This document shows positions 2,481-37,252 of a stretch of DNA of 39,104 nucleotides, piece by piece (the stretch's first letter is position 1; the number at the start of each line of letters is the position of its first letter). The notes beneath the pieces were generated by a model that worked only from the letters and a program-made list of their open reading frames with translations, had not been told where the DNA came from and made no database searches. The position numbers and the translations under genes were made by a program. This DNA is from Octopus bimaculoides (taxonomy: Eukaryota), in assembly GCF_001194135.2 (NCBI RefSeq), contig NC_068998.1, forward strand, positions 29,697,375-29,736,478. The letters are read 5' to 3'.

Positions 2481-3460
2481 TAAAAAATAAAAGATTCGAA
2501 ATATTGAAATGATATATGAATCTAATTTATATAAACGCACATGCACACTGTAAATACCTGCAAATATTTCCGATATTTTAAAGCATTAGCTCACGCGTAC
2601 AAACACACATACACACATAAGGTGGTATCAAAATGTTCGCGGACAAGTTCTGTAGCGTGCCAACATATGGCAGAACACGGTTGTGTGCGCAGTGAGAGCT
2701 AGCAGTAACCTTCATGAGTCAGTGTGCCGAGTGTCATTGCTGTGTTTACTTCGCATGTTGTGAAATTTGTTTTTGTGATTACATGTATTCTGTAGTCTGC
2801 GATTTTGTTATGGAACAAAGAGCCAACGTGAAATTTTGCGTTAAACGTAGGAAGTCTGCTACAGAGACATTGAGCATGCTTCGGTAAGCTCACAGCGACG
2901 AGGCAATACGTTGTACGCATATTTCGAGTGGCACAGGCGCTTCAAAAGCGGGAGAACGTCCCTGGAAGACGATGAGCGATCTGGAAGAACTTCCACAAGT
3001 ATCACCCCCAGAAATGTAGTATTGTGCATCGAGAATTTGTCCCTGGGGGTCAGAACGTCAATCAAGAGTTCTACTGCAACGTTTTGAAGCGTTTGAGGGA
3101 GGAATTCGACGAAAGCCAGCGGATCAGTGGAGCGCGAAAAATTGGATTCTTCACAACGACAATGCACTCTGTCATGGAGCTCTCCTCACTTGTTTCTCGC
3201 CAAAAGCATCATGGTATTGCTTCTACAGCCGCCCTATTCGCCAGATTTAGCACCTACGGACTTTCGTCACTTCCCCAAGACGAAAATATAGCTCAAAGGT
3301 CGCTGTTTTAACACCGTTGTCGAGATCCAGAGTGAATCGCAGAAGGTCCTCGATTCGCTTACAGAAAACGACTTCCAGGCCGGATTCCAAAAATGGCAGG
3401 AACGGTGGAATCGGTGTATTGCTGTGCAAAGTGAAGGTGACGATGTTAAAACTTATTTTT

Positions 3461-3830
3461 TTTATTTGTTTCAGTTATTTGACTGCGGCCATGCTGGAGC
3501 ACCGCCTTTAGTCGAGCAAATCGAAACCAGGACATATTCTTTGTAAGCCTAGTACTTATTCTATTGAACTCTTTGCCGAACCGCTAAGTTAGGGGACGCA
3601 ANNNNNNNNNNNNNNNNNNNNNNNNNNNNNGACACAAGCATATACACACACAAGCAAACACACGCACACACAAACACACACACACACACACATATACGAC
3701 GCGCTTCTTTCAGCTTCCGTCTACCAAATCCACTCACAAGGCTTTGGTTGGCTCGAAGCTACAGTAGAAGGCACTTGCTCAGATTGAACCCGGAACCATG
3801 TGGTTGGTAAACAAGCTACTTTCCACATAG
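3461..3830 (-). mobile_element. tRNA-derived CORE-type SINE (octopus OR/OK-like), nested in the mariner
   Basis: Homologous to the copies at 8558-8972 and 15435-15863 (GACTGCGGCCATGCTGGAGCACCGCC tail, internal CA repeat, CTACCAAATCCACTCACAAGGC body). It interrupts the mariner 3' region and contains the N-gap. Confidence 0.85.
3601..3630. other. Assembly gap (30 N)
   Basis: N run. Confidence 1.
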
Positions 3831-8557: not shown

Positions 8558-8972
8558 TCTCTTTTACTCTTTTATCTTTTACTTGTTTCAGTCATTTGAC
8601 TGCGGCCATGCTGGAGCACCGCCTTTCGTCGAGCAAATCGACCCCCAGGACTTATTATTTGTAAGCCTAGTACTTATTCTATCGGTCTCTTTTGCCGAAC
8701 CGCTAGCTTACGGGGACTTAAACACACCAGCATCGGTTGTCAAGCGATGTTGCGGGGACAAACACAGACACACAAACACACACACATATATATACATATG
8801 CATATATACGACGGGCTTCTTTCAGTTTTCGTCTACCAAATCCACTCACAAGGCTTTGGTCGGCCCGAGGCTATAGTAGAAGACACTTACCCAAAGTGCC
8901 ACGCAGTGGGACTGAACCCGGAACCGTGTGGTTGGTAAGCAAGCTACTTACCATACAGCCACTCCTGCGCCT
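8558..8972 (-). mobile_element. Full-length tRNA-derived CORE-type SINE
   Basis: Minus-strand head AGGCGCAGGAGTGGCTGTATGGT (A box) and GGTTCAGTCCC (B box), a CORE-like CACTTTGGGTAAGTGTCTT segment, an internal TG/TA repeat, and tail GACTGAAACAAGTAAAAG. Confidence 0.9.
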
Positions 8973-10592: not shown

Positions 10593-13500
10593 ATGAGTCT
10601 TCCCCACTTACCAACGTATTCTGGTGACGTCACATTTTTGTTCGCCCAGTTGGACGCTTATTTTTCGGCCCATGCGGTGCCTCACGAACAGCAACTAAGT
10701 CTATTGTACTGTGGGATGCCTAGCCCTCTTGCACGCTCAGTGAGAGATCTTATCGCTGACTCACATCCGGACGCGACTTATGCGTCCGTTAAATCTGAGG
10801 TCCTCCGACGGAACACCCAATCCGCCAACAGCAAACTCCAGACGCTGATGCAGGATGAGCAGCTGGGAGAACTCAGCGACACATTGCCAGAGGAAAATTC
10901 TCTGCTCCGAAAATTAGTTTTCTCTCGGCTGCCGCCGAATGTCCAATCCATACTGGCCAGAGCGCTCGACTCGAATTCATTCGACCAGTTAGCTACCATG
11001 GCGGACAAAATTATTGAGTTCACTGTGCAGCCTGTGCCTCAACATACCTGTTCGGACACCGTAGTAGCTTCTTCTACTACCGCTAAGTCCACTCCCTCGT
11101 CACATGACGACATTTTGGAGAGAGTCGATGCGTTAGCACGTCGCATGGACACATTGTGGCGAGAACACGCCAGCTCTCGTCATCCTCGCAGCAGAAGCCG
11201 TTCTAAGTCACGGTCGACTAGGTCTATTCCAACGGGTTTCAATCTCTGCTGGGACCATGCCACTTTCAAGGAGAAAGCCCGTCGTTGCATCCAACCATGT
11301 GCATTCTTTGTTAAGGATCGTGTGTCTAAGAAATCATTCACGGTTGACACTGGATCCAGCTGTTCTATTTGGCATTTGCGTTTTACTTCAGACAAGCTGA
11401 AGCAATCTGCCATCAACCTGCACGCGGTGAATTTATCCCCGATGAAAACTTACGGTCAGGTCTCATTACACCTAGATCTCAACCTTCGAAGGGATTTTAG
11501 GTGGGTTTTTGTTATAGTAGATCTACCATATCCCATTCTGGGCGCGGACTTCTTAAACCACTTTCACTTATTAGTAGATGTCAGGCGTCAGAGACGCGTG
11601 GACGATTCTACGTCTTTGTTCACGCCTGCTCGCGTTACTACTAATGCTGTTTTTAGTCCGTCATTTTTTGTCGCCACCACTGGTAACCAGTTCCACTCCT
11701 TTTTGGCTTCTTTCCCAGAGCTGGTAGATCCGACTTTCAAATCAGTGAAAGTCACACACTCAACTCACCATTATATCACTACTTCTGGACCACCCGTTTT
11801 TTCGCGTCCACGGCGACTTGCTCCTGATCGGCTCAAAAAGGTTCGATCTGAGTTTGAACATATGCTTCAACTCGGCCTTATTCACTCCTCTACCAGCCCT
11901 TGGGAATCTCCTCTACATTTGGCAAGGAAAGGGGATTCAGACATTCGCCCGGTGGGGATTATAGACGTTTAAATGCGGTCACTGTTCCCGATCGCTATCC
12001 TATAAGGATTCTTCAGGATTTTTCTTCGAACTTGCATGGGTGTACATTTTTTTCCAAAATTGACCTTATCCGGGATTATCATCAGATTCCAATGAACCCT
12101 GACGACATTCCCAAAATTGCCGTTACTAACCCCTTTGGAAGTTTCGTGTTCCTGTTTATGAGCTTTGGTTTGTGGAATGCAACGAGTATCGATGAAGTTG
12201 TCCGTGGATTTGACTTTGTGTTCGCTTACGTCGATGATTTGCTCATAGCTAGCGACATGCGTGAAAATCATCTCCAACATTTATCTCAACCTTTTCAGCG
12301 TCTTCGCAACTACAATGTGCGAATCAACCCCGATAAGTGTGTTTTTGGGCAGTCCTCTCTGGAATTTCTGGGGCATTATATCGACTCGAATGGTATCAGT
12401 CCTCTCTTTTCCAAAGTCGATGCAATTCAGCGCATCACACTTCCCACTTCTCTACGCCAATTGCGCCAGTTTTTGGTAATCGTCAATTTCTATAGACGCT
12501 TCATACGTAAATGTGCAGACAAGTTACTTCCATTGACTCAACTACTGAAAGCAAATACAAAAAGTGATGCTCCTATCACTCTATCTGCCGAGGCATTATC
12601 TTCTTTTGAGTCAATTAAGAAGGAAATAGCTTCTGTTCCCTTGCTTGCACATCCGGCTCCTGATGCTCGTCTCTCATTAACAGTTGATGCATCGGATTCT
12701 GCGGTTGGTGCTGTTTTGTAACATACCGTCATTAATCAAACTCGGCCTTTGGCATTTTTTTCTTGTCAATTAAAACCAGCTGAGCATCGTTACAGTACGT
12801 TTGATCGTGAACTCTTAGCGATCTACCTGTCAATCCGTCAAGTGACGGATTGACAGGTAGATCGCTAAGAGGGCCGAGATTTTGTGATTTATACTGATCA
12901 CAAGCCTCTTCCGTTCGCTTTGTCATCTAAGTCGGACAAACACTCGCCTCGTGCTTTTCGTCACTTGGACTACATTTCCCAGTTCACGAGTGACATTCGG
13001 CATATACCTGGAATAGAGAACGTACCTGCTGACGTACTCTCTCGTCTCCCTGAATGTTCTTTTTCAACTCCTGCTGCAATCGATTTAACTGCCATTGCGC
13101 AGGATCAGCCAGCTCTGGACACATTGGATCTAACTTCCACCAAGCTGTCCTGTTGCAAGTTTGCCTATCTTCCACTTACATCTGCTGAAGGCATAATCCT
13201 TTGTGACACAGCTACTGGTTCTCCCAGACCGTTTGTACCTGCGATCCACCAGCGTTCTGTTTTCGATCCTTTGCATTCACTGTCACATCCTGGCATCGCT
13301 GCTTCGGTGAAGCTTATTACGGCTCAGTTTTTCTGGCCTAATATGCACCATATGATCACCGCTTGGGCACGCTCTTGTGTGAAATACCAGCGTTCTAAAG
13401 TCCACAGGCACATTCGCGCTCCTCTTGGATAGTTTTCTCCTCCAGAGACTCGCTTTCGCCATGTCCACATTGATCTGGTTGGACCATGGTCTGTCAGTCG

Positions 13501-14218
13501 CGGGTTCTGTTACATATTGACATGCGTCGATCGTTTCTGAAGGCTGCTCTACGCGCCACTCCTGATCCACAGTCTTGGACAGAATTTCTGCCTATTGTTC
13601 TTCTTGGTTGTCGCACTGCTGTTAAAACAGACCTTAGGTTTCTCCACTGCTGAATTCCTTTACGGTACCATCCTGGTACTCCTTGACACAATGTTGGCGC
13701 CAGACAATTCATCGCATCCTGATCCAACGTCGTATGTCACCAGACTTCGCTCGTATTTCTCAAGTTTTCCACCCATGCATCTACGTGACCAGTCTATTCC
13801 CTCTCACGTCCCACCGGGCATTGACAAATGGACTCATGTTTTTTTTCAGAATGATTTTGTCAAAGGACCTCTCGTTTCTCTTTATAAGGGACCATTTCGT
13901 GTGCTATCGAGCACACCCAAAACTTTTAGTCTCGACATTAATGGTCGGGTGGAGACCGTGTCGGTCGACAGACTTAAAAGGGCACATTTTGAGGTGTCAA
14001 CACCCTTCGATGATACCTCAAACACGCCCACCTTTGATCCTTTGCAACTACCTACACGTCCACCTGCGCATGCACCTTTGACCACACCATTACCTACACC
14101 TCCACCTTCGTCACCACTACCTAACACGAACAAACCCTATGTCACCAGGACAGGCCGCACTGTGCATTGGCCCAAAACACTCACTAGAACTAACTTTTTT
14201 TCTTTTTTCTTCCTGTGA
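10593..14218 (+). pseudogene. gag-pol: Gypsy/Ty3 gag-pol (gag, protease, RT, RNase H, integrase), decayed
   Basis: Gag (LFAQLDAYF), protease DTG (11346-11354), RT ([26 protein letters not shown] at 12227-12238), RNase H ([21 protein letters not shown]), integrase HHCC region (HSLSHPG..SCVKY), HIDLVGP, and the GPF motif (YKGPFRVL). PR-RT-RH-IN order indicates Gypsy. Multiple frameshifts, stops and deletions. Confidence 0.95.
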
Positions 14219-15434: not shown

Positions 15435-15596
15435 GTGGCTGTGTGGTAAGTAGCTTGCTTGCCAACCACATGGTCCCAGGTTCAGTCCCATTGCGTGGTA
15501 CCTTGGGCAAGTGTCTTGTACTATAGCCTCGGGCCGACCGAAACCTTGTGAGTTGATTTGGTAGACGGAAACTGGAAGAAGCCCGTCGTATATGTG

Positions 15597-15633
<37 letters not shown>

Positions 15634-15863
15634 ATGTGTGTGTGTGTGTGTGTTTGTGTGTCTATTTGTACCCCCAGCATCGCTTGACAACCGGTGCTGG
15701 TGTGTTTACGTCCCCGTAACTTAGCGGTTCGGAGAAAAGAGACCGATAGAATAAGTACTAGGCTTACAAAGAATAAGTCCTGGGGTTGATTTTCTCGACT
15801 AAAGGCGGTGCTCCAGCATGGCCGCAGTCAAATGACTGAGACAAGTAAAAGAGTAAAAGAGTA
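15435..15863 (+). mobile_element. tRNA-derived CORE-type SINE (slightly 5' truncated)
   Basis: GTGGCTGTGTGGT A box, GGTTCAGTCCC B box, ACCTTGGGCAAGTGTCTT CORE-like segment, (TA)/(TG) insert, and (GTAAAAGA) tail. Confidence 0.9.
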
Positions 15864-15907
15864 TTTACTTTTGTGCATTTAATTGTCGTCTGCTAAATCG
15901 AACTTTT

Positions 15908-16518
15908 AATTTTTAGAAATAATACATTTCTAAATCTCTCAGAGAGATTTATGCAGTAGTGATACGATGAAGTAGTTGTATGCTGTCAACTTAATGTGAC
16001 AGTCCCCTGAAGGGAATAATACTACTGTTGGTTAGACTAGGAAGCTGCACCTTGTAAACATAAGGATACAGGAAATGTGTCAAGGCGACAGGAAGCGGTG
16101 CAGCTTCCTAGGTCAGTAGTATTATTCCCTTCAGGGGACTGTCAGATTAAGTTGACAGCATACAACTGCTTCATCGTATCATTACTGTATAAATCTCTCT
16201 GAGAGATTTAGAAATGTATTATTTCTAAATTTGAAATCAGTGAATGTATTTCACTAGAATTATTATGTTTGCAAGAGCTTGACAGGTATCGACTAGCAGG
16301 TCATACTACTCCAGACTGATGACGAGCAAAGACTCAGAAACATGTCTCTGGATGCAGGCTTAGCTGGGTGGAGGTGCTTGTCTCCCCCTTGTAAACATAA
16401 GGACACAGGAAATGTGTCAAGGTCGACAGGAAGCGGTGCAGCTTCCTAGGTTTAACCAACAGTAGTATTATTCCCTTCAGGGAACTGTCACATTAAGTTG
16501 ACAGCATACAACTACTTC
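15908..16518 (+). mobile_element. Non-coding hammerhead-bearing element (PLE pseudo-LTR or retrozyme-like): inverted arm plus 1.4 tandem units, flanked by a 10-bp TSD
   Basis: Inverted repeat 15912-16051 / 16097-16229. Direct repeat starting at 16050 and 16387 (period 337 bp). TCGAACTTTT at 15898-15907 and 16517-16526. No ORF. Confidence 0.75.
16310..16352 (+). ncRNA. Minimal type I hammerhead ribozyme motif
   Basis: Stem I TCCAGA/TCTGGA, core CUGAUGA, stem II (C)GAG-CAAAGA-CUC(A), GAAA, palindromic stem III ACAUGU, predicted GUC cleavage after 16346. Position 10.1-11.1 is a C.A mismatch. Confidence 0.7.
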
Positions 16519-17904
16519 GAACTTTTCATATTTATTTATTAGATAGCGATAGACGAATTATTTAGAAAGCATAATGGTAGTAATAGCAAAAATAGCTGCA
16601 GTTGTTAATTAAGTTTAAGCAATAATCGGAAAATTAGGCTTAAGAAAGAGGAAATAGAAAAGAATGTGAGATATGAATTTTGAGTAGTATTGGAAGCATA
16701 GACAGCAACAAGTGTGGTGGCACGAATACAGGTTAATGAATCATTTGAATTAATGGGGAAAAACTAGTGTGATTCAACGAAAATTCTTTGAAATTCTTTA
16801 GAAAAAGACTAGATTGCATACAATCAGCATTTCTTTCCATATTTCCATAGTTGTTAATCATACGAGCATTTTATTTTTTTTTTTTGCCGGAATCCAACCA
16901 TTTGGAATTGTTAGATTTCCAATATGCGTGTTGAGATAGACGTAGATGGAAAACACAAAGTATCGTCTTCGTCTCCCTCTCATATAGATCAGAAAGGAAA
17001 GGTCGCATGCTTTGACGAGTAATCGCCAAGAATTTATCTAATTATTATGATTGTAATCATTAAAAAATGTGAAAAGCTGTAGTGTTTTGGTGCATAACGG
17101 TAATTATCAGACACTCTTCTCTCCTGAGAGCATCATCTATGTAAGAGGTATTGATCACATATTCGATGCATCTTAGAACATCGTATAATTAAATATTTTG
17201 CTTTGTTATTACCACAGACCAGTACATCACAGATAAAACAGAATTTGTAAGGGATAAAGAGATGAAGAAAAGTAAAGAAAAACAGAAAAAAAGAAAATCG
17301 AAACAATTTTGAAAGGCTACTTGTCTATGCCAATATCATAAGCCCATTGCTGAAAACCAAGAAATTTGAAAACAATTTTCAAAATAAAAAAATTGGAGTA
17401 AAGTGACTTTCCAGCACGTCCGTCACCCTTCCTGTCATTTCACTGTTCTGAGCCAGTACTGCTAAGAATCTGTTTCTGTAATCTGAGTGTATGCGTATTC
17501 TAGTGTGTGTGTGTAAATCTGTTTTTGTATGCGTTTAAATTTACGTCAACAAATAGTTTTAATATATGTTCTAAATGTGCGGATAGAGAATAGACACATA
17601 AATTAGCATACATCTATGTTAATGTATTAAATTATATTTATTGCAGTCAACGGACCGAGACAGTGAGTCTGAATCAATTCCCAGTTGAACACGTTTAATT
17701 TGCAATGCTAGTGATTTATTTTTACTATATACACTACAGTCAGTCGATATAGTACCGGGCAACCAACCGAAGTACTAGTAATTTATAGTCCGTTAATTTT
17801 GAAATAGTTAAATTCGCCTAGCTTTAAGTAGATAATTGCATACAGAATCTGACCTCTGTAAACAGTTTTGGATTTAAGACCATTTTACTTGTTTTCACTG
17901 CTAG

Positions 17905-19914: not shown

Positions 19915-20008
19915 NNNNNNNNNNNNNNNNNNNNNNNNNNNNNNNNNNNNNNNNNNNNNNNNNNNNNNNNNNNNNNNNNNNNNNNNNNNNNNNNNNNNNN
20001 NNNNNNNN
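19915..20008. other. Assembly gap
   Basis: N run between (TA)n and (TAGA)n. Confidence 1.
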
Positions 20009-21467: not shown

Positions 21468-23620
21468 GAACACCATCTTGGATGCATACCTGGATAGGAC
21501 GGGGCTAGCTGAGTGGAGAGAGGGAGTAAAAGCCTCACAAACCAGCTCAGTCTCTTCCGGTTGGCTGACAGAAACCGACTGGATTTCCCGAATGCGCCAA
21601 TATGGACATGGGCGAACCGCATCGCGTCTTCCAGATCGTTTCTCGATAGAGTATTTTGTAGACCTGTTGATAGAAGAGGTAGTAGAAGTTGTCCACGTTT
21701 CAAAGTCGTCGACTACACGGACAATAAACTTGTTATCTATACTGTCAACATAGATAGAATCCATAGACAGGACCCTGGATATTGGAAACTGCACACGTCC
21801 TTCACGGCGCGCCAAGCAATCAGAGACCGGGTTAGCAAGTTAGTCCGTCGAGAGTTGGTGGGCGCAATCAGCCGTTGATGGATAGCCCTGAAAAAGTCTA
21901 TTAGAGTAGAAGCGGTAGGTTTTAGACAGGAAATAGCGTTAGAGGAATCTAGGATAGAGGAGACCTAGCTAGAAAGCTAAAAGAGGCGCTTGGGAAAGGC
22001 ATAGCGACCGACGTGCTAGCGGCAAGATTGGCTCTTGATCAATTCTTCAATACCAAGCACGAAGATTGCGTTGTGAGAGCTAGGGCAAAGATCAACCAGG
22101 AAAAGTCGGTAGGCCTGCAGCTCGGCACCTGGAGAGGCAGGTTCATGCCAAACGACAGCATTTTAGGGCGCTGGACGGAAGGACAGGCTAAATTTCTCGG
22201 GTCTGGTTTGGTCCAGACCTCCAGGTAGACAAGAACTGGGGGAAGGTGACGAGCAGGGTAGCCAATCTCACCCAGAAACGGGCAAAGAGGAAGCTGTCCT
22301 TGAAGGGTCGGGTGGAGGTGGCGAATGCGTACATCGCTTCCGTCATCTACTACCGCCTGACCGTCGTCCCTTGCTCTATTTCGAGTCTGATAAAGTTTGA
22401 GTGCTTACTCTTCCATTTTTTATGGAAGGGACGTGTCCCACTCGTCAGACGGTCCATCTGCTGTTAACAGTCGCTGAGTGGCGGACTGGACAAGTCATGG
22501 CTAATGATGCGCTGACATGCGCTGAAGCTGCGACATCTCCAGCATTTCCTTAACGGTGAGCAAGTGTGGTCGCCGTTCGTCAAACGGAACTTTCCGCAGC
22601 TCGTCTCATTGATGGAGCTACTGTTCTGGGTCAAGCGTAGACCAAGAAAGGGCGCCTGGAGCCTGGAGTGTCGGCAAGTGCTCACAGCCTTTTGCCAGTC
22701 GGGCAACGAGGTCGGTCAAAGTTCCACCATGGAGTTCTACAGAGGATTAGTAGAGGGAAAGAGCGGTGATGTACTCGGGGAAACTCTGGGCGTCGAGAGG
22801 GATGAACTAACTGGTCTTTTCCGGAGGATTTTTTGGTCAGGACTTATGGATAACTTCCAGAAATTCCTGGCCTGGCAGCGCTACCGGGGAGCTCTGCCGG
22901 TCCGAGACAAGCTCTACAGACACAGAAATGATGTCAGATGGACCTGTCTGAGATGTACGTAGGGCGATGGAACCGTCCTGCATGTACTCGTACAGTGACT
23001 GTGCATTACTATGGAGTTTCGTCGAACAGCTGTTGTCACGTGTAGGACAGATCCGGTTATCAGCCGAGTCCATTGTGAGAATCACCCCGCCGCCTACTTT
23101 TGGCCGGGAGGGAAAGGCAGCTTTCCTCTGCCTGGTGGCTATAGCGAAAGAAGTAGTGTGGTGGACGAGGCTAAAAGGACTGAAGACTGACACTTTCCTC
23201 TTCGGCCGAGCCCTCATCGACTTTTTCAAGTGGAACTTGAAAAGAAAAGTGAGGGTAAAGAGGGAAGTACTGCCTCCCACCCTCACCCAGTAATTTTATT
23301 GAAAGATGGGTGAATGTTGCCAAAATGGTTCGTGTGAATGGGCCTATCCTGAAAATTCGTCTGTAAGCCGGAGCAGTTAAGGGGAAGAGGGGTGCCTACC
23401 TGGAGTGCCCTTGGCAGTTGGGGTAATCAGGATGTGTGGGATGCCCTGGGTGGAACTCCCTCTATTGGGGAATTTTGTTGTTTAATTTTTTGTTAACTGT
23501 TTTTGTTTTTATTGTTTACACGTTTTCTGTTTTAAAGCCCACTTGTCCCTTATTTTGTATCGTCCCTATATGTTTTTTGTGTTCGGCCCTTATAGCCAAT
23601 AAAGAAAGGATTATTATTTC
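21468..23620 (+). mobile_element. Tx1/L1-like non-LTR retrotransposon, 5' truncated with RT core deleted
   Basis: APE C-terminus (WTWANR..SFLDRVF, YTDNKL, PGYWKLHTS), linker (VVRARA), then a direct jump to late RT (AKINQEKS, LSLKGRVEVAN) and the C-terminal LAW..YRGALPVRDKL..CxRC..H zinc knuckle. T-rich 3' UTR ending AATAAAGAAAGGATTATTATT. Confidence 0.9.
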
Positions 23621-24061: not shown

Positions 24062-24771
24062 ACTCATCATGGCTACCCGTCTAATAAGGGTACACTAGTC
24101 CATGCATCACAACGATATGTGCGCGATATGGTGACCTTATATCAAGATAAACAACACATGACCTTACAGCTGAGACCCATTTAGAATTTTCTTCAGGACT
24201 CTGAATGAGGGTTGTTTAAGGATAATGAACAAAACGCCCCTGTTTCCAGAGGCGATTTATTCAGATCCCAAAGAATTCCTCTCAATACATGGCTATGATG
24301 CTCCCCCACTACTTCTGCTTGTGATCAGAAATGCACATATTGCCAGCCACTATGGGACATGCTCAACTGATTAAGGTCAAGCAACTGACAAGCAAGTCTG
24401 TGGTACTGAGCAGAATATTTGCTGTAGCCCATCTTTTATACCAAGACAAAACAATGTACATGATAACACTTCCAATCAGTTAAGATCAGAAGCCATGAGA
24501 GCCAGTACCTGGTACTGCATCAGAGCATTCATCATCATCATCATCATCATCTTTCTATTCTGTTTCCATTTCTTGCCGAATATCTTCCTGACACCTAGGG
24601 CATTGAAACTCATTGTATACATTGGTAGGCCATTAAAATAAATACACCAGATTGTTCATTTACAAAGTTATGTGACAGAGAAAAAAAAGAAAGACAGAGA
24701 AAAAGGAAAATATGAAAAAATGAAAAAGTTAACAAAGAAAATAAAGGGGGAAAGAGAAAGAAAGTTCACAG

Positions 24772-27700
24772 CGACAATCTTTTGCATTTCCTGCATGGAT
24801 GGTAAGCCAGAGATCATTCTCAAATAATTTTCAGTTCCTTTTGTGATCATTCCAAGTGCTCTTACAATTACTGGTATTGTAACCGTCTTGAGATACCACA
24901 TCTTTTCGATTTCGATTACCAAATCTTTATATTTTTTGAGCTTATCAAATTCTTTTGCCGAGATATTATGGTCACAGGGTACGCTCATGTCAATCAATAA
25001 ACAGACGTTATTGTTTTGGTCTTTCACAACAATGTCTGATTTATTAGCTTCGTACGTACTGGAAAGTCCAAAAGAATCGTTACATTTTCCCCCTCAGTTA
25101 CAGCCTCAGAGTGGCGCTTGCAGCATTTGTCAGCAGTTTTGATTTTATAATGCCGACATATTATCCAGTGTAGGTATTGGCCAACTCTGCCATGTCTTGA
25201 TTCATATTCTACAGGTGCTAAAACCTTACAGCCAGAGATTAGGTGGTCCACTATTTCAATCCCCGTCATTGCAGTATCGGCAGTTTGGGTCTACTCCATT
25301 TTTCATTACACTGGCTTAATAGTTCCAGGTAAATAAGCTTTGACCTTGAGCAATCAAGATAAAGCCTTCCTTCTCTACCTTTGACTCTGACCTCCGTAGC
25401 CACTGATGAGTGTACTTCTGATCTACATCAACCTGTTTGATATGGGCCACATATTTGCCATGCAAAGGTCTTTGTTCCCACATGTCAGCCAATTGTTCAA
25501 ACACATTTTGCTTTGCTATTAATTTCACCTTTCTTGCAACTACAGTTGCCGCACTTCTGTGATGTTGTTCAACCTGGGTATTATGCATAAACTCACTTGA
25601 ACATTTTTTGCTCTCCTTCATAATAGAATGAAGTTTCTTACATCTTTCGTGATTTTCAGCCAGCTTTAGCATCTAGTCATTAGATATCTCATCATATTTT
25701 GCCAGTCCAATTGTGGTGGTTTTGTAAGAGACTTCAAACTGGATCAAGCCTCGGCCTGCTTGAGCTCTGGGTAGGTAAAGACGATCTGCGTCTGCCTTTG
25801 AGTGGTGCATCTTATTGAAAGTCAGCAGCTTACAGATTTTCCTGTCAGTCTTCCTTATTTCGCTCATTTTCCAGTTCAACACAGTGATAATGTAAATAAC
25901 AACCGGAAGAAATTTCTAGCTAACACCACGTTGCGTGCATTTAACTCGGATTTTAGGACTGTTCGAACTCTCCTGTAATATTCCTTCTCTTTCATGCTTA
26001 CATGCTGAATGCCAGAGCTCTCATTTATTCTGAGGTATTTGTAAGTTTGTTCCTGCTCGAATTCTTTTATAACTGTGTCAACACCTAACTGTGTCTTCAA
26101 TTTCCCTTTCTGGAAAATGGCCTTAAAACATTTATCAAAACCAAATTCCATCCCGATGTCATCACTGAATGCTTTCACAGTACGTAATAGTCCTTCAGGC
26201 TCATTATCATCTTTGCCATAGAGTTTTAAGTCATCCATATAAAATAGATGACTTATTTTCTTGTCGCCAATTATATATCCATACCCTGTTCTGTTACGTT
26301 TTGTAAGGGGTATCAGGGCTATGCAAAAAAATTAGAGGTGAAAGTGAGTCACCTTGGAAAATGCTGCAGTTGATATTAATATTTTTTGTGGTCAGTACTC
26401 TGTTAAAGTGGTATAATTGGAGATTTGTATTCCACATTGACATGTGCTTCAGGGAGTTTGAAATCACAGGAAAAATTTTGAAGATATCCAGCGATAGGCC
26501 TTTCAATAATCAATCCATACGGAACTTAGATTTCTGCGTTTGTTATGACAGTTCTCAAGGATCAATCGATTGATTAAGAGTTAGTGTTTGCATCCATATG
26601 TGCCTCGTCGGCACCCTTTTGTTCGTTCTGTTCCATAAATCTGCATGTTTTCTCTATCTATCCTGTATGTTTACGAGGATAGCTGTTCAAATTTTATACG
26701 TAGTAGATAGACATGTTTTGGGAAAATTTGGTTTCATTATTCTTCGGGAGTAGGTAAGTAACCAGGTATTTATTTAGGATCTCTCATAATTTCATTGAAT
26801 AACTGAACTAACTTTTCGTGTGCGCACGGGAGCGATGCGAGCCAGAAATTTGGCACCTTATCATTACCAGGGGATTTCCACTTATGAGCCTTTGTGAGTG
26901 TCATCCTTAGCTCTGCTATTGTGATGTCTTCCCGTGCTTGTTCTGGTAAGTTTTGGTAGAATCCTTTAGTGCATCTAATCCTGTCTGCATTTTCATTGTA
27001 AGTCTTTTCATCACTCCAGATATTTTTCCAAAAGTTTTTAACTTCTTCCATGGGTCTTCAACGATTATTTTCTCATTCCCTATTTCTCTGTAGAATATTT
27101 TTGCATTGGATGTGAACAGCTTATTTTGCTTGTCAAACGTGTTTCTCTTCTTAAATGTTCGTATTCTTTGAGCTTTTGTTTAGAATTTTTGTTGCAGTGT
27201 TTCTTTTGCTGAAAGCAGTTCTCTTGGAGAAATCTGTTTTCTCTTCATCTTTCTTCCTTTTCTGGATTTTACATTGTCTCTACAGATTAGTTCATTCAAT
27301 ATTGATACTTCACCTCTCATTACTTCACCTCTCATTGACTTTCTTTTTCAATTTTACTTTTCCAGTTTGGAATTCTTTTCACGTTTGTATTTCTTTGATT
27401 TTTAAGAGGTATACAACTGGTTCCAATTGTTTTACTAGCTGCGTAAATAATTTCGTTTAATTCAATTTTGTTACATAGTTCCCCAATTTAATTTGTTTTC
27501 TATTTTGGATTGTGTTTGAGAGTTTATGAAGTGTTTCTCTATCATGCATATTGGCGTGTCTTACAACTGCAAGCTTATTCAGGATTTTCTGATTCATTTC
27601 TATCATAGACTCTATGTTTTTCAGTAAATGTGTAGTCTTCAAATATTGTTTCTTTACCACTTTTCTCGCTATCTTTATCAGGTTCATTACAATTTATTTC

Positions 27701-27868
27701 TTCAGACGTTTGCGTGTTCTGGTCAGATGGCAGTCTTTCAATTGAGACTCGTGGAGAGTTGCTCTCTTAATTTCCTTTATGTCTTATACTTATGTCATTT
27801 TCCGCTGTGTGCTTGATTGCGGTTATTTCACTACCTGTGAGTCTTTTACTTCTGAAGATATCCCTCCC
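24772..27868 (-). mobile_element. Long degenerate R4/Dong-type LINE (RT plus CCHC and RLE endonuclease)
   Basis: In order on the minus strand: RDIFRSKRLT, FWKNIWS, WKSPGNDKVPNFW, IFQGDSLSPL, YMDDLKLY, HSKADADRLYLPR..GRGL, PLHGKY, VDHLISGCKVLA..Y..RH, LLIDMSVPCD..KYKDL. The 5' end abuts the (TAA)n array. Many stops and frameshifts. Confidence 0.92.
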
Positions 27869-28083
<215 letters not shown>

Positions 28084-28950
28084 TTTATCATTGCCTTTGC
28101 ACAGCTTCTAACGCTGGAGATATACTACGGTGTCAGCTATTCACTACCAGTGAACTAAGGTAGCACCTCTTATTTTTCGAGCACCTCCCGGAGTATTCGA
28201 GCGGTTCCAAGCATGCTGCTTTCTGCAAGTGCTCCACCTTTATTGCAGCCCCTATTTGTTCCACGTACTTCTCGAGATTTTTGCTCACTGTTCCCAGGGC
28301 TCTGACAATTATTGGTACTACTGCTACCTTTTTCATCGACCGCAACTGCTTAACTTCCCAAGCTAACTTGTCATATCTCTCGACTTCTCTTTCTTCCTTA
28401 TCGCATACCTTGTCAGCTGGACATGCTATATCTATGATCCAGCATAGTTTGCTTTCTTTCTCAATTAAGACTATGCCTGGCTTCCTATTCTCTATCTCAT
28501 GGTTGCACTGAATCATGAAATCCCATAGGATCTTTGCATTTCTATTTTCGACGATGCCTTCAGGTTTGTGGTCGTACCAATTTTTTGCTCTGTCAAGTCC
28601 ATACTTGTTGCAAAGTGTCCAATGGACAAGCCTAGCTATATTGTCGTGGCGTCTCTTATATTCCTCCTGGGCTAGTGGTGTACATTGGCTGGTAATATGC
28701 CATGCAGTTTCACTGTTTTGTCCACAGATTCTGCACTTATCACTTTCTGATGTGTTGTCTATTCTGCATTTTATGTAGTTTGTTCTTAGTGCTTGCTCTT
28801 GGGCAGCACAGATTAGAGCCTCCGTTTCCGGTTTTAAATCACTTTTAGTCATCCACAGAAATCTTTTTTCTCTGTCTGTCTTATCTTCAACATCCCTATG
28901 AAATTGACCATGCATTCTTTTCTTTACCCACCTATTTTCAGTTTCATCCC
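28084..28950 (-). mobile_element. R4/Dong-type LINE 3' fragment, well preserved
   Basis: Open frame with MHGQF, LKPETEALICAAQEQALRTNY, zinc knuckle CRICGQNSETAWHITSQC, RHD, RKPG (PD position mutated), IIDIACP, and a 1-nt frameshift before LGTARILREVLEK*. Both ends abut (TAA)n on the element strand. Confidence 0.93.
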
Positions 28951-28967
28951 TTATTATTAATATTATT

Positions 28968-29036
<69 letters not shown>
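28951..29036. repeat. (ATT)n microsatellite
   Basis: Directly visible. Confidence 0.97.
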
Positions 29037-35410: not shown

Positions 35411-36050
35411 NNNNNNNNNNNNNNNNNNNNNNNNNNNNNNNNNNNNNNNNNNNNNNNNNNNNNNNNNNNNNNNNNNNNNNNNNNNNNNNNNNNNNNNNNN
35501 NNNNNNNNNNNNNNNNNNNNNNNNNNNNNNNNNNNNNNNNNNNNNNNNNNNNNNNNNNNNNNNNNNNNNNNNNNNNNNNNNNNNNNNNNNNNNNNNNNNN
35601 NNNNNNNNNNNNNNNNNNNNNNNNNNNNNNNNNNNNNNNNNNNNNNNNNNNNNNNNNNNNNNNNNNNNNNNNNNNNNNNNNNNNNNNNNNNNNNNNNNNN
35701 NNNNNNNNNNNNNNNNNNNNNNNNNNNNNNNNNNNNNNNNNNNNNNNNNNNNNNNNNNNNNNNNNNNNNNNNNNNNNNNNNNNNNNNNNNNNNNNNNNNN
35801 NNNNNNNNNNNNNNNNNNNNNNNNNNNNNNNNNNNNNNNNNNNNNNNNNNNNNNNNNNNNNNNNNNNNNNNNNNNNNNNNNNNNNNNNNNNNNNNNNNNN
35901 NNNNNNNNNNNNNNNNNNNNNNNNNNNNNNNNNNNNNNNNNNNNNNNNNNNNNNNNNNNNNNNNNNNNNNNNNNNNNNNNNNNNNNNNNNNNNNNNNNNN
36001 NNNNNNNNNNNNNNNNNNNNNNNNNNNNNNNNNNNNNNNNNNNNNNNNNN
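35411..36050. other. Assembly gap (640 N) preceded by (TG)n
   Basis: N run. Confidence 1.
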
Positions 36051-36106: not shown

Positions 36107-37252
36107 ATGTTAGGTCATCAAGTATGAAATTTGTAGTAAGGTATATGATAAACTTTGACAACTGCTCATTTTGCGACATTATTATATTTTCACAATCTCT
36201 ATTTTTTGTTAGAAAGCTGACACATCTATTTTTTTATTCTAACTCATTTTGCGCTTTATAAAGTATTTATAAGTTGTTTTTTGCTATTTTTGTTTAGAGA
36301 GGGATAAGTCGGAAATTCGTACAGTTTTGAAATATGAGTTCTTTCTTGGAAATACAGCATCAAAGACAGCTCGGAATATTAATGGAGTATTTCATTCTAA
36401 TGTTATTACACAACAGACAGTATCAAATTGGTTTGCAAAATTTTGTTCTGGTAACTTTGACCTCACAAATGAGCAACGAGGTCAACCAGACTCAACGGGG
36501 GATAATGACGAACTGAAAGCCCCCGTCGAGTAAATCCATCTCAAAATGCCCGTGAATTATCGTTGTTGTTTGGTGTTAGCAATATTGACTCACTTAGTTC
36601 AAATTGGTAAAGTAAAAAAGTTGGATATGTGGCTTCTACATGAATTCGATGAAAATCAGAAACGGCAACGTTTGGAAGCCTGCATTATACTACTTTCTCG
36701 TCACAAAAATCGAATTGTAACATGTGATGAGAAATGGATCCAATGCAACAACCGTAAGCGTTCAGCAGAATGGTTGGATAAACACGAGCCACCAAAACAC
36801 AAACTAATAATAAAAAGTCATCAAAAGAAGCTGATGGTGTGTGTTTGGTGATCTGGCGCAGGTGTGATCCCTTATGATTTCATTAAACCATCAATCATGG
36901 CCGAAGCATACTGCAGCCAACTGAACCAAATGATGCAGAAACTTACAAAAAACAGCCTCTTATTTTATTGCAAGACAACGCCAGACCACTACAGGAAACT
37001 ACAGGAGTTGGAGTTGGAAGTTCTCTATCATCCACCATACTCATCCGATCTTACCCCCACTGACTACCACTTCTTCCAGAATTTGGACAAACGTTTTGAT
37101 AGGAAAAATTTAATTCCAACGATGCTGTAAAACAGGCCTTCCAAGATTTTATTGACTCTAGATTGCCAGGCTTTTACAGTTCCGGGCTGGACAAGCTACC
37201 GCTGAAATGGCAAAGGTGTATTGACAATATGGGTGCATACTTTGATGAATAA
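36107..37252 (+). mobile_element. Decayed mariner transposon (Hsmar1/cecropia-like transposase)
   Basis: EIRTVLKYEF..TASKTARNIN, QIGKVKKLDMWLLHE (WVPHEL), RIVTCDEKWI, HQKKLMVCVW, HPPYSSDLTPTDYHFFQNLD, KWQRCID..GAYFDE*. Putative 5' TIR near 36107; 3' TIR not found. Confidence 0.9.

What the first reader, a model, noticed from the sequence alone, without database searches (positions are those of the whole stretch)
15898..16526. TSD-flanked fold-back plus ~340-bp tandem non-coding element: retrozyme or PLE pseudo-LTR
Seen: a 10-bp TSD (TCGAACTTTT) brackets a ~140-bp inverted arm, a 45-nt loop, one 337-bp unit containing a hammerhead, and a ~130-bp second partial unit. There is no ORF. The inverted arm duplicates retained sequence, and it shares an indel state with copy 2 (the AACCAA-containing segment that copy 1 lacks). 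Established: PLE insertions produce tandem and inverted pseudo-LTRs; metazoan non-LTR retrozymes are short tandem units with minimal hammerheads that yield circular RNAs. Inference: one integration event copied through an intact ribozyme junction with terminal redundancy, as expected from a circular or multimeric ~340-350-nt RNA template. This may be an undescribed cephalopod retrozyme family.
Basis: partly seen in the sequence, partly recalled or inferred. Interest (0 to 1): 0.85.

Follow-up and report, generated by a model that had tools for sequence, protein, structure and literature searches.

The report
Hammerhead-bearing mini-retroelement insertion, Penelope-style
This is one old, non-coding, 609-bp retrotransposon insertion in an octopus-like genome, built from a ~340-nt unit with a hammerhead-ribozyme-like motif and arranged as Penelope-like elements arrange their insertions; it is a probable new member of the known animal 'retrozyme' class, not a new kind of element.

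Summary
A perfect 10-bp duplication (TCGAACTTTT, 15898-15907 and 16517-16526) brackets a 609-bp non-coding insert. The insert holds an inverted arm (15912-16051), one 337-nt forward unit (16052-16388) and a 128-nt second partial unit (16389-16516).

A type-I hammerhead-like motif sits at 16310-16352, with predicted cleavage at 16346/16347. It is the only descriptor hit in the window (0.003-0.017 expected by chance). No Rfam hammerhead model matches it, and its helix-II closing pair is C·A instead of G-C.

The layout matches published Penelope-like element (PLE) insertions:
- a partial head-to-tail tandem;
- a head-to-head inverted 5' copy;
- a 57-nt extension on one end only;
- an 8-10-bp-class TSD;
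- a hairpin at the inverted junction.

There is no RT/GIY-YIG ORF, and the period is 337-346 nt. My best reading is a retrozyme-type, PLE-dependent non-autonomous element. Both nicked target strands would have primed copying from an RNA longer than one unit (multimer or circle).

No second copy could be found, because no cephalopod nucleotide collection was searchable. Family status, circular RNA and ribozyme activity therefore remain untested. Verdict: new member of a known kind, moderate-low interest.

The parts
15898..15907 (.). Left copy of the 10-bp target-site duplication, TCGAACTTTT
   Evidence: Chance rate 7e-4.
15908..15911 (.). 4-nt filler AATT between the TSD and the inverted arm; it matches neither the unit nor the target
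   Evidence: Three-way alignment; blastn homology starts at 15912.
15912..16051 (-). Inverted 5' arm: reverse complement of unit coordinates 16097-16229. It carries the 8-9-nt segment that copy 2 has and copy 1 lacks. Its outer end reaches 57 nt further 3' in unit coordinates than the end of the forward copy.
   Evidence: There are 4 substitutions in 131 nt against copy 1 and 2 in 84 nt against copy 2.
16050..16051 (.). CC microhomology at the junction between the inverted arm and the forward copy
   Evidence: Sequence comparison of 16037-16056 with 16375-16395.
16052..16388 (+). Forward unit 1: 337 nt, GC 41%, no ORF. Its first 45 nt (16052-16096) form the loop of the fold-back.
16090..16109 (+). 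Hairpin intrinsic to the unit, AGGAAGC-GGTGCA-GCTTCCT. The inverted arm stops exactly at its loop/5'-stem boundary (16096/16097).
   Evidence: Sequence reading. Palindromes at inverted junctions are reported for PLEs (PMC3846280).
16173..16229 (+). 57-nt 'tail-like' segment, present at the outer end of the inverted arm but absent from the 3' end of the forward copy. It holds two hairpins (AAATCTCTC/GAGAGATTT and TTTAGAAAT/ATTTCTAAA) and a TATAAA at 16188.
   Evidence: Compared with the PLE 'tail' of 30-40 bp (PMC8557442, PMC11167929).
16310..16352 (+). Type-I hammerhead-like motif. Helix I: 16310-16315 with 16347-16352 (6 bp). CUGAUGA: 16316-16322. Helix II: 16323-16336 (C·A plus 3 bp, loop CAAAGA). 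GAA: 16337-16339. Helix III: 16340-16345 (2 bp, palindromic ACAUGU). C17: 16346.
   Evidence: Descriptor scan found 1 hit in the window against 0.017 (relaxed) or 0.003 (strict) expected per shuffled window. No Rfam hit.
16346..16347 (+). Predicted self-cleavage site. The forward copy reads through it uninterrupted.
16389..16516 (+). Forward partial unit 2 (0.38 unit). It ends at unit coordinate ~16170-16172, with a 2-nt TC overlap with the TSD.
   Evidence: There are 4 substitutions in 121 nt plus two indels against copy 1.
16517..16526 (.). Right copy of the target-site duplication, TCGAACTTTT

Best explanation
This is one retrotransposition event of a short (~340-nt unit), non-coding, hammerhead-bearing element of the animal non-LTR retrozyme type, meaning a non-autonomous passenger of Penelope-like element (PLE) machinery.

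Inferred mechanism:
1. A PLE RT/GIY-YIG protein made staggered nicks 10 bp apart in an AT-rich target.
2. The bottom-strand 3'-OH primed cDNA synthesis at an internal site of the RNA (unit coordinate ~16172). That cDNA ran 465 nt, through the uncleaved or religated hammerhead junction, into the preceding unit. The template was therefore a multimeric transcript or a circular RNA.
3. The top-strand 3'-OH primed a second cDNA at a nearby site (~16229, 57 nt further 3'), which ran about 140 nt.
4. The two cDNA 3' ends annealed through a CC/GG microhomology next to a hairpin in the unit, and each was filled in.

The product is the head-to-head inverted arm, followed by 1.38 direct units, flanked by a 10-bp TSD.

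Shown here: the anatomy, the statistics, the motif, and the orientation consistency. Inferred: the enzyme, dual-strand priming, the nature of the template, and any ribozyme activity.

The copy is probably dead. It has a single ribozyme motif with a non-canonical 10.1/11.1 pair, and its three repeat copies differ by about 3% pairwise.
For: Anatomy and TSD.

Hammerhead-like motif:
- It is the only hit in 39 kb on both strands, against 0.003-0.017 expected per shuffled window.
- By my count from established knowledge of the core, 13 of the 15 conserved positions are present. PMC6155905 gives only the number 15.
- Helix I (6 bp), four helix-II positions, and a 2-bp helix III with a palindromic loop fit the 'canonical metazoan type I' description in PMC4209133.

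Retrozyme-like properties:
- Period 337-346 nt, GC 40-41%, no ORF, TSD longer than 4 bp. These match the metazoan retrozyme description (PMC7229834: repeats of 150-450 bp, 350-390 bp in mussel).
- The circular monomer folds unusually well: z = -3.5 and -4.5, against -1.5 to +1.1 for flanking controls.

PLE-like architecture:
- Partial tandem plus an adjacent inverted 5'-truncated copy, with an extension at one end only, as in PMC8557442.
- The motif lies on the strand of the direct copies, with the inverted copy at the 5' end (head-to-head), as in PLEs.

Biochemistry: a purified Poseidon PLE protein cleaves and extends both DNA strands. It starts reverse transcription at two adjacent internal RNA sites without target homology, prefers AT-rich targets, and uses unprocessed RNA (PMC11167929).

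Potential partners: octopus genomes hold recently active PLEs, with 31 families in O. vulgaris (PMC13282606).

No RT or GIY-YIG domain was found among the ten large window ORFs tested, and no ORF of 100 aa or more lies between 14218 and 19848.
Against: - No second copy of the unit was found anywhere, so 'family' is unproven.
- No Rfam hammerhead model matches, even at E<=10 in an 86-nt search.
- Positions 10.1/11.1 are C·A instead of G-C, which by established hammerhead biochemistry should weaken catalysis.
- Only 1.38 units and one ribozyme motif are present.
- The 'tail' is 57 nt, against the 30-40 bp typical of PLEs.
- The 5' end of the forward copy (16050-16052) is not at the ribozyme-cleaved end (42 nt away), so nothing here requires ribozyme processing.
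- The PLE biochemistry cited comes from a lizard element, not a mollusc one.
Confidence: 0.5

Rival explanations
1. Same element and same PLE-type integration, but the inverted arm arose by snap-back. The 3' end of the single first-strand cDNA folded back on itself through the GG/CC microhomology beside the unit's hairpin and copied itself. That hairpin end was then joined to the upstream target.
For: - The arm is exactly complementary to the adjacent forward sequence, with a 45-nt loop.
- The junction abuts an intrinsic 7-bp hairpin.
- Self-priming at palindromes was proposed for the inverted repeats of PLEs (PMC3846280).
Against: - The arm would be born identical to copy 1. Instead it shares the 8-nt segment and two substitutions with copy 2 against copy 1, which needs extra post-insertion changes in copy 1.
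- It does not explain why the arm ends 57 nt beyond the other end's start point, at the foot of a hairpin.
- In vitro the PLE protein extends both strands (PMC11167929), which makes a second priming event the simpler route.
Confidence: 0.2
2. It is not a dedicated retrozyme family. It is a severely truncated or internally deleted piece of an autonomous PLE, namely its pLTR region, which itself contains a ~340-bp internal repeat.
For: - Most PLE insertions are heavily 5'-truncated and leave only terminal sequence (PMC8557442; 10.64898/2026.07.22.740005).
- Hammerhead motifs normally lie in pLTRs (PMC4209133).
- Solo pLTRs and pLTRs flanking unrelated non-coding DNA with TSDs are reported (PMC3846280).
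Against: - A truncated copy of a 3-4-kb tandem PLE should repeat with the PLE's own period, not 337-346 nt.
- No coding remnant lies inside or beside the TSD-bounded insert.
- The unit folds like a compact, self-paired RNA.
Confidence: 0.15
3. A SINE-like RNA was inserted by a LINE (non-LTR) reverse transcriptase, and the 5' inversion arose by classical twin priming. The hammerhead-like motif is incidental.
For: - Non-LTR RT remnants are present in the window.
- Twin priming gives 5' inversions with microhomology junctions and TSDs of similar size (established for L1).
Against: - There is no poly(A) or simple-repeat 3' tail.
- There is no tRNA-like head.
- In twin priming the inverted and direct segments are adjacent on the RNA. 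Here about 160 nt between them would have to be skipped.
- The chance of the motif falling in this 609 bp is about 3e-4 or less (my arithmetic).
Confidence: 0.07
4. The structure arose at the DNA level: a local duplication or inversion, a satellite fragment, or a foldback/TIR DNA transposon. On this view the flanking direct repeat and the hammerhead-like motif are both coincidences.
For: - The long inverted repeat with a short loop resembles foldback elements.
- Only one locus is available.
Against: - The inverted repeat does not sit at both ends of the TSD-bounded insert. The right arm ends 280 bp before the right TSD.
- TSD chance is 7e-4 and motif chance is 0.017 or less per window. Their joint occurrence, in the orientation expected for a PLE, is very unlikely.
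- A simple inversion of a tandem cannot give the observed junction coordinates (my analysis).
Confidence: 0.05
5. The structure is an assembly artefact, such as a chimeric palindromic read.
For: Fold-back structures are known to trouble assemblies (PMC8557442), and the window contains N gaps.
Against: - The arms differ by 2.4-3.3% and by indels, unlike an artefactual palindrome.
- The structure is internal, small, and TSD-flanked.
- The nearest gap is more than 3 kb away.
Confidence: 0.02

Closest known systems
Metazoan non-LTR retrozymes (Cervera & de la Pena 2020, PMC7229834; review PMC7761336), e.g. the 350-390-bp mussel retrozymes
   Same: - Non-coding unit of ~340 nt.
- GC below 50%.
- Type-I hammerhead architecture with a weak, palindromic helix III.
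- Head-to-tail repetition.
- TSD longer than 4 bp.
- The monomer is predicted to be highly self-paired.
- The host is also a mollusc.
   Different: - Only 1.38 units and a single ribozyme motif, against arrays with one ribozyme per unit.
- C·A at 10.1/11.1 and no Rfam match.
- Copy number, circular RNA and cleavage are untested.
- It carries an inverted 5' arm, which the retrozyme papers I read do not describe.
Penelope-like element insertions, e.g. Pen2a_Av of Adineta vaga (PMC3846280), and the general PLE layout (PMC8557442)
   Same: - Direct terminal repeats from a partial tandem.
- An adjacent head-to-head inverted 5' copy.
- An extension ('tail') on one end only.
- TSD of 8-10 bp.
- A palindrome at the inverted junction.
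- A hammerhead motif on the sense strand.
   Different: - No RT/GIY-YIG ORF.
- The whole insert is 609 bp and the period is ~340 nt, rather than 3-4 kb.
- The tail is 57 nt, not 30-40 bp.
- The hammerhead has a canonical-type short helix II, not the long helix II of PLE 'minimal' hammerheads (PMC4209133).
Poseidon PLE of Anolis carolinensis (PAc), in vitro integration (Frangieh et al. 2024, PMC11167929)
   Same: It predicts what is seen here: both target strands used as primers, two nearby internal RT start sites, no homology between primer and template, an AT-rich target, and a template not processed at the hammerhead.
   Different: - It is a vertebrate autonomous element.
- Its RT start sites lie about 85-120 nt 3' of the hammerhead cut, against about 172 and 229 nt here.
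- Nothing was measured for this locus.
Newt satellite 2 and Schistosoma SM-alpha hammerhead repeats (classical type-I hammerhead satellite/SINE-like repeats; PMC6155905)
   Same: - Repeats of a few hundred bp carrying a type-I hammerhead with a weak helix III that works as a dimer.
- From my memory of those sequences, loop 2 (CAAAGA) resembles their CAAAUA. This is a lead, not a test.
   Different: Those are high-copy arrays that Rfam Hammerhead_1 recognises. This is an isolated 1.38-mer that Rfam does not recognise.

Membership tests
Metazoan non-LTR retrozyme | Type-I hammerhead ribozyme with a conserved catalytic core in each unit | tested here: inconclusive
   The descriptor hit at 16310-16352 carries CUGAUGA, GAA, A15.1-U16.1 and C17, plus helices I-III. 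However, 10.1/11.1 are C·A, no Rfam hammerhead model matches, and only one motif is present.
Metazoan non-LTR retrozyme | Head-to-tail tandem repeats of about 150-450 bp | tested here: inconclusive
   The period of 337-346 nt is in range. Only 1.38 units are present, and TRF calls no array.
Metazoan non-LTR retrozyme | Non-coding; no LTR/PBS/PPT; GC below 50%; TSD longer than 4 bp when present | tested here: met
   The longest stop-free stretch is 53 codons. GC is 40-41%. The TSD is 10 bp. PBS and PPT were not searched for specifically.
Metazoan non-LTR retrozyme | Multicopy family dispersed in the genome | not testable with these tools
   - One copy in the 39-kb window.
- None in about 105 kb of fetched loci, including 21 kb of Octopus sinensis.
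- Pattern scans of the metagenome, viral and prokaryote collections were empty.
- No cephalopod nucleotide collection was available.
Metazoan non-LTR retrozyme | Expressed as self-cleaved linear and circular RNAs of unit length | not testable with these tools
   No RNA data were available. The only related result is that the predicted circular fold is unusually stable, z = -3.5 and -4.5.
Penelope-like element (autonomous) | A single ORF with a telomerase-like RT and a GIY-YIG endonuclease | tested here: not met
   There is no ORF in the insert. No ORF of 100 aa or more lies between 14218 and 19848. Pfam finds only LTR-type RT/integrase, zf-RVT and mariner domains among the ten large ORFs tested.
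PLE-type insertion architecture | Partial tandem giving direct terminal repeats (pLTR-like) | tested here: met
   16052-16172 and 16389-16516 differ by 4 substitutions in 121 nt.
PLE-type insertion architecture | An inverted 5'-truncated copy adjacent to the 5' end, head-to-head, with the whole structure inside one TSD | tested here: met
   The arm at 15912-16051 lies on the opposite strand, immediately 5' of the direct copies, inside the 10-bp TSD.
PLE-type insertion architecture | An optional 30-40-bp 'tail' present at one end only, reflecting two adjacent RT start sites | tested here: inconclusive
   The two ends map to unit coordinates ~16172 and ~16229. That is a one-sided extension, but of 57 nt. 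A single locus cannot show that the ends are recurrent.
PLE-type insertion architecture | Sequence shared with the terminal region of an autonomous PLE of the same genome | not testable with these tools
   No octopod PLE sequences could be retrieved, and the protein searches were exhausted.
Rfam hammerhead families (Hammerhead_1 RF00163 and relatives) | A score at or above the family's gathering threshold | tested here: not met
   No hit at gathering over the whole window. No hammerhead family at E<=10 in 1.5 kb or in 86 nt.
TIR DNA transposon / MITE / foldback element | Terminal inverted repeats at both ends, directly inside the TSD | tested here: not met
   The right arm of the inverted repeat ends at 16229-16236, 280 bp before the right TSD. 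The right terminus pairs with an internal part of the left arm.
LINE-dependent SINE | A tRNA/5S/7SL-derived head and a poly(A) or simple-repeat 3' tail | tested here: not met
   ARAGORN finds no tRNA-like structure. The 3' end ...CAACTACTTC has no tail.

The most novel reading that the evidence does not exclude
This locus would be a preserved integration fossil showing that, in a cephalopod, retrozyme RNA longer than one unit (a circle or a multimer) is integrated by PLE-type dual-strand target-primed reverse transcription from two fixed internal start sites (about 172 and 229 nt 3' of the ribozyme cut). That would be the first structural link between retrozymes and PLE machinery in a mollusc, coming from a hammerhead family with a non-canonical C-G/C·A 10.1-11.1 pair that current Rfam models miss.
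Probability: 0.35. Interest if true: 0.5.

Novelty: new member of a known kind. Interest (0 to 1): 0.35.

Why it matters
How animal retrozymes move is still inferred mainly from co-occurrence and sequence kinship with Penelope-like elements. The 2026 preprint that argues for this states that it covered mainly vertebrates and has little evidence on the life cycle.

A clean, TSD-bounded retrozyme-type insertion that shows the PLE hallmarks would be direct structural support for PLE-mediated mobilisation in a mollusc. Those hallmarks are a head-to-head inverted 5' copy, a one-sided tail and a microhomology junction at a hairpin. It would also show that the template was read through the ribozyme site.

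The locus also warns that Rfam-based counts of hammerheads in cephalopod genomes (235 Hammerhead_1 loci in the giant squid, PMC6962438) may miss variant families.

For the host genome itself, this copy is most likely inert repeat DNA.

Tried and rejected
1. Rfam search at gathering threshold over the whole window, at E<=10 over 1.5 kb, and at E<=10 over 86 nt. No hammerhead family was reported; the only hits were weak snoRNA/miRNA chance matches.

2. MFE folding of the 66-nt ribozyme region alone. It is no more stable than shuffles (z +0.8). This is expected for a hammerhead with a 2-bp helix III, so it is uninformative.

3. Search for other copies:
- blastn of the element against the window found only itself.
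- A concatenation of all stop-free translations of the unit was searched against 5.8 billion predicted proteins, hoping to catch spurious ORFs on other copies. There were 0 hits.
- Exact-pattern scans of metagenome, viral and prokaryote contigs, using the ribozyme pattern and two conserved unit segments, gave 0 hits.
- No paper in the library prints the ribozyme sequence.

4. Locating the source assembly by exact lookup of window ORFs. They are not on record.

5. Sampling related genomes through TE proteins. Loci L001-L005 (about 105 kb, including 21 kb of Octopus sinensis) hold no copy. The sample is far too small to be informative.

6. A paralogous empty site. The neighbouring repeat ends 34 bp before the TSD, and the junction flanks are unique, so no paralogue exists.

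7. tRNA-derived SINE: rejected.

8. Simple inversion of a tandem, and classical adjacent-segment twin priming: both rejected, because the junction coordinates do not fit (analysis).

9. Run-off at the ribozyme-cleaved 5' end: rejected, because the forward copy stops 42 nt short of that point.

10. The supplement of the O. vulgaris repeat paper holds no repeat library.
Full report
**Observation**

The region reads as the first-stage reader described.

- The 10-mer TCGAACTTTT occurs at 15898-15907 and again at 16517-16526.
- Between the two copies lie 609 bp.
- 15912-16051 is the reverse complement of 16097-16229. The repeat finder reports 123 nt at 94% plus a perfect 15-nt block.
- 16052-16096 is a 45-nt loop.
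- 16052-16172 recurs at 16389-16516 with a spacing of 337-346 nt.
- The forward part is therefore one 337-nt unit plus 0.38 of a second.
- As single-stranded DNA the fold-back has dG -141.7 kcal/mol, 32 SD below shuffles.
- A flanking 10-bp exact repeat within +-6 bp of two random boundaries occurs in 146 of 200,000 trials (7e-4). The TSD is not chance.
- The arm and copy 2 share an ~8-nt segment (TTAACCAA / CTAACCAA) that copy 1 lacks.
- No frame is open for more than 53 codons.

Refinements:
- Arm homology starts at 15912, leaving 4 nt of filler (AATT).
- TRF calls no tandem, because there are only 1.38 copies.

**The ribozyme motif**

Read directly from the sequence, the motif is: UCCAGA-CUGAUGA-C-GAG-CAAAGA-CUC-A-GAA-ACAUGU-C | UCUGGA, at 16310-16352.

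- Helix I is 6 bp.
- Helix II has four positions, of which the outer one (10.1/11.1) is C·A.
- Helix III is 2 bp with a 2-nt loop, inside the palindrome ACAUGU.
- Cleavage would follow C16346.

This is the architecture that PMC4209133 calls canonical for metazoan type-I hammerheads: helix I of 6 bp, helix II of 4 bp, and helix III of 1-2 bp capped by a small palindromic loop that works as a dimer.

A descriptor scan I wrote finds exactly this one hit on both strands of the window. In 300 dinucleotide shuffles the expectation is 0.017 per window (relaxed) or 0.003 (at the observed quality).

Against it:
- No Rfam hammerhead family matches at gathering or at E<=10, even when only 86 nt are searched.
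- The G10.1-C11.1 pair is replaced. By established knowledge this pair is part of the conserved core and of a metal site.
- The locus has a single motif, so it cannot excise a monomer by two cuts.

I therefore call it a hammerhead-like motif of the right architecture, with unproven and probably weakened activity in this copy.

**The unit as an RNA**

- A circularised monomer folds with z = -3.5 (337 nt) or -4.5 (346-nt version). Nine flanking control windows give -1.5 to +1.1.
- GC is 40-41%.

Both values fit the published description of retrozyme RNAs as compact, self-paired circles with GC below 50% (PMC7229834, PMC7761336).

**Surroundings and source**

The window is repeat-rich eukaryotic DNA with three N gaps. 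It contains:
- a decayed LTR retrotransposon at 10.6-14.2 kb;
- non-LTR RT remnants at 22.5-29 kb;
- a mariner fragment at 36.5 kb.

No RT/GIY-YIG (PLE) domain was found among the ten large ORFs tested, and no ORF of 100 aa or more lies between 14218 and 19848.

On the source organism:
- The LTR element's RT is closest, among named proteins, to an Octopus sinensis protein at 73% identity.
- A SINE-like repeat just upstream of the insert (15682-15852) matches an O. sinensis chromosome at 80-85%.

An octopod-like origin is therefore supported. The species is not identified.

**Other copies**

None was found.

- The element is single-copy in the window.
- A six-frame peptide trick against 5.8 billion predicted proteins returned nothing.
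- Pattern scans of the three DNA collections returned nothing.
- About 105 kb of fetched loci hold no copy.

None of these collections is a cephalopod genome. These negatives say almost nothing about copy number, and the family-level test remains open.

**Comparison with known insertion structures**

The layout is the published PLE signature.

- PMC8557442 describes partial tandems forming pLTRs. [quoted passage not shown]
- PMC3846280 describes Pen2a_Av as two direct pLTRs plus an adjacent inverted pLTR, flanked by a 9-bp TSD, with a related copy flanked by a 10-bp TSD. It has a 31-bp tail on one of the inverted pLTRs, and palindromes at inverted junctions.

The same features appear at this locus:
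- The direct repeats are 16052-16172 and 16389-16516.
- The inverted copy is head-to-head at the 5' end.
- The TSD is 10 bp.
- The outer end of the arm (unit coordinate ~16229) lies 57 nt beyond the end of the direct copy (~16172), which is a one-sided extension.
- The arm stops exactly at the loop/stem boundary of an intrinsic hairpin (AGGAAGC-GGTGCA-GCTTCCT, 16090-16109).
- The motif is on the strand of the direct copies, as in PLEs.

What differs is scale. The period is ~340 nt and there is no ORF, which is what defines the non-autonomous retrozyme class (PMC7229834). The 2026 preprint 10.64898/2026.07.22.740005 argues that animal retrozymes are pLTR-derived non-autonomous PLE sequences. 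PMC13282606 reports 31 recently active PLE families in O. vulgaris, so partners plausibly exist.

**Mechanism (inferred)**

PMC11167929 shows that a purified Poseidon PLE protein:
- cleaves and extends both target strands;
- initiates at two adjacent internal RNA sites without homology to the target;
- prefers AT-rich targets;
- uses RNA not processed at the hammerhead.

Applied to this locus:
1. The bottom-strand nick primed at ~16172 (2-nt TC overlap with the TSD). Its cDNA ran 465 nt through the ribozyme site into the preceding unit.
2. The top-strand nick primed at ~16229, after 4 filler nucleotides. Its cDNA ran about 140 nt.
3. The two 3' ends paired through CC/GG (16050-16051) and were filled in.

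Reading through 16346/16347 requires a template longer than one unit. That could be an uncleaved multimeric transcript or a religated circle, and this locus cannot tell which.

The three repeat copies differ pairwise by 4/121, 4/131 and 2/84 substitutions. This is roughly a star pattern, compatible with identical copies at birth and about 1.5% change each since. With the octopus calibration quoted in PMC13282606 (JC 0.09 for about 25 My), that is very roughly 4 My. This is an inference from about ten substitutions.

**Rivals**

- Snap-back self-priming of a single cDNA gives the same topology and was proposed for PLEs (PMC3846280). It predicts that the arm equals copy 1 at birth, whereas the arm shares the 8-nt state and two substitutions with copy 2. 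It also does not explain the position of the outer end.
- A truncated autonomous PLE should repeat at the PLE's own period, not ~340 nt.
- LINE-type twin priming lacks a tail and a tRNA head, and its junction coordinates do not fit.
- A TIR or foldback DNA element is excluded, because the right arm ends 280 bp before the TSD.
- An assembly artefact is unlikely given the 2.4-3.3% divergence between the arms and the indels.

**Verdict**

The locus is best filed as a probable new, possibly undescribed, octopod member of the known class of hammerhead-bearing non-autonomous PLE passengers (non-LTR retrozymes). It is preserved as one old and probably inert insertion with an unusually legible PLE-type integration signature.

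Membership in the retrozyme class is not proven:
- multicopy arrays, circular RNA and cleavage are untested;
- the Rfam hammerhead test was not met.

Interest is moderate-low (0.35), and would be higher if the genome-wide checks confirm recurrent ends at the two predicted start sites.

Noticed in passing
window 15500-15863 (+), 8565-8897 (-), 3460-3781 (-): A composite repeat of about 330-365 bp, made of a (TA)n(TG)n microsatellite followed by a SINE-like sequence ending in (AGTAAAAG)n, occurs three times in the window at 73-84% identity. The SINE part matches Octopus sinensis chromosome CM016860.1 (L002 21024-21317) at 80-85%. The microsatellite appears to travel with the SINE.
   Followed up: partly
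window 10593-14218 (+): A decayed LTR-type retrotransposon split over several frames, with DUF7041 gag-like, RVT_1, RNase H and integrase zinc-binding domains. The closest named relative is 'K02A2.6-like' of Octopus sinensis at 73% aa identity.
   Followed up: partly
window 22564-22962 (+) and 24668-28972 (-): Fragments of non-LTR reverse transcriptases with zf-RVT domains. The best database relatives (71-74% aa) lie on megabase contigs of an ENA assembly (ERZ25066843) that does not carry the octopus SINE in the sampled 33 kb.
   Followed up: partly
window 36546-36851 (+): A mariner-type transposase fragment (Pfam Transposase_1).
   Followed up: no
window 3602-3630, 19915-20008, 35411-36050: Three runs of N (29, 94 and 640 bases). 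At least the second and third are bordered by TG/CA-type microsatellites, so these are assembly gaps at simple repeats.
   Followed up: no
window 27779-28163: A long trinucleotide-type low-complexity tract. It translates as runs of Leu/Ser, or Tyr/His/Arg, depending on frame.
   Followed up: no
window 16186-16243: Inside the unit's tail-like segment there is a TATAAA (16188-16193), followed by two back-to-back hairpins and a TCAGT about 50 nt downstream. PLE pLTRs are reported to carry TATA and initiator-like promoter motifs (PMC3846280). The spacing here is not the canonical ~30 nt, and nothing was tested.
   Followed up: no
window 15890-15915 and 16508-16535: The reconstructed target ...CTGCTAAA|TCGAACTTTT|CATATTTATTTATT is AT-rich. 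The inferred bottom-strand nick falls at GA|TTT, reminiscent of the ATT preference reported for a lizard PLE endonuclease (PMC11167929). This is a single site and is not evidence of specificity.
   Followed up: no
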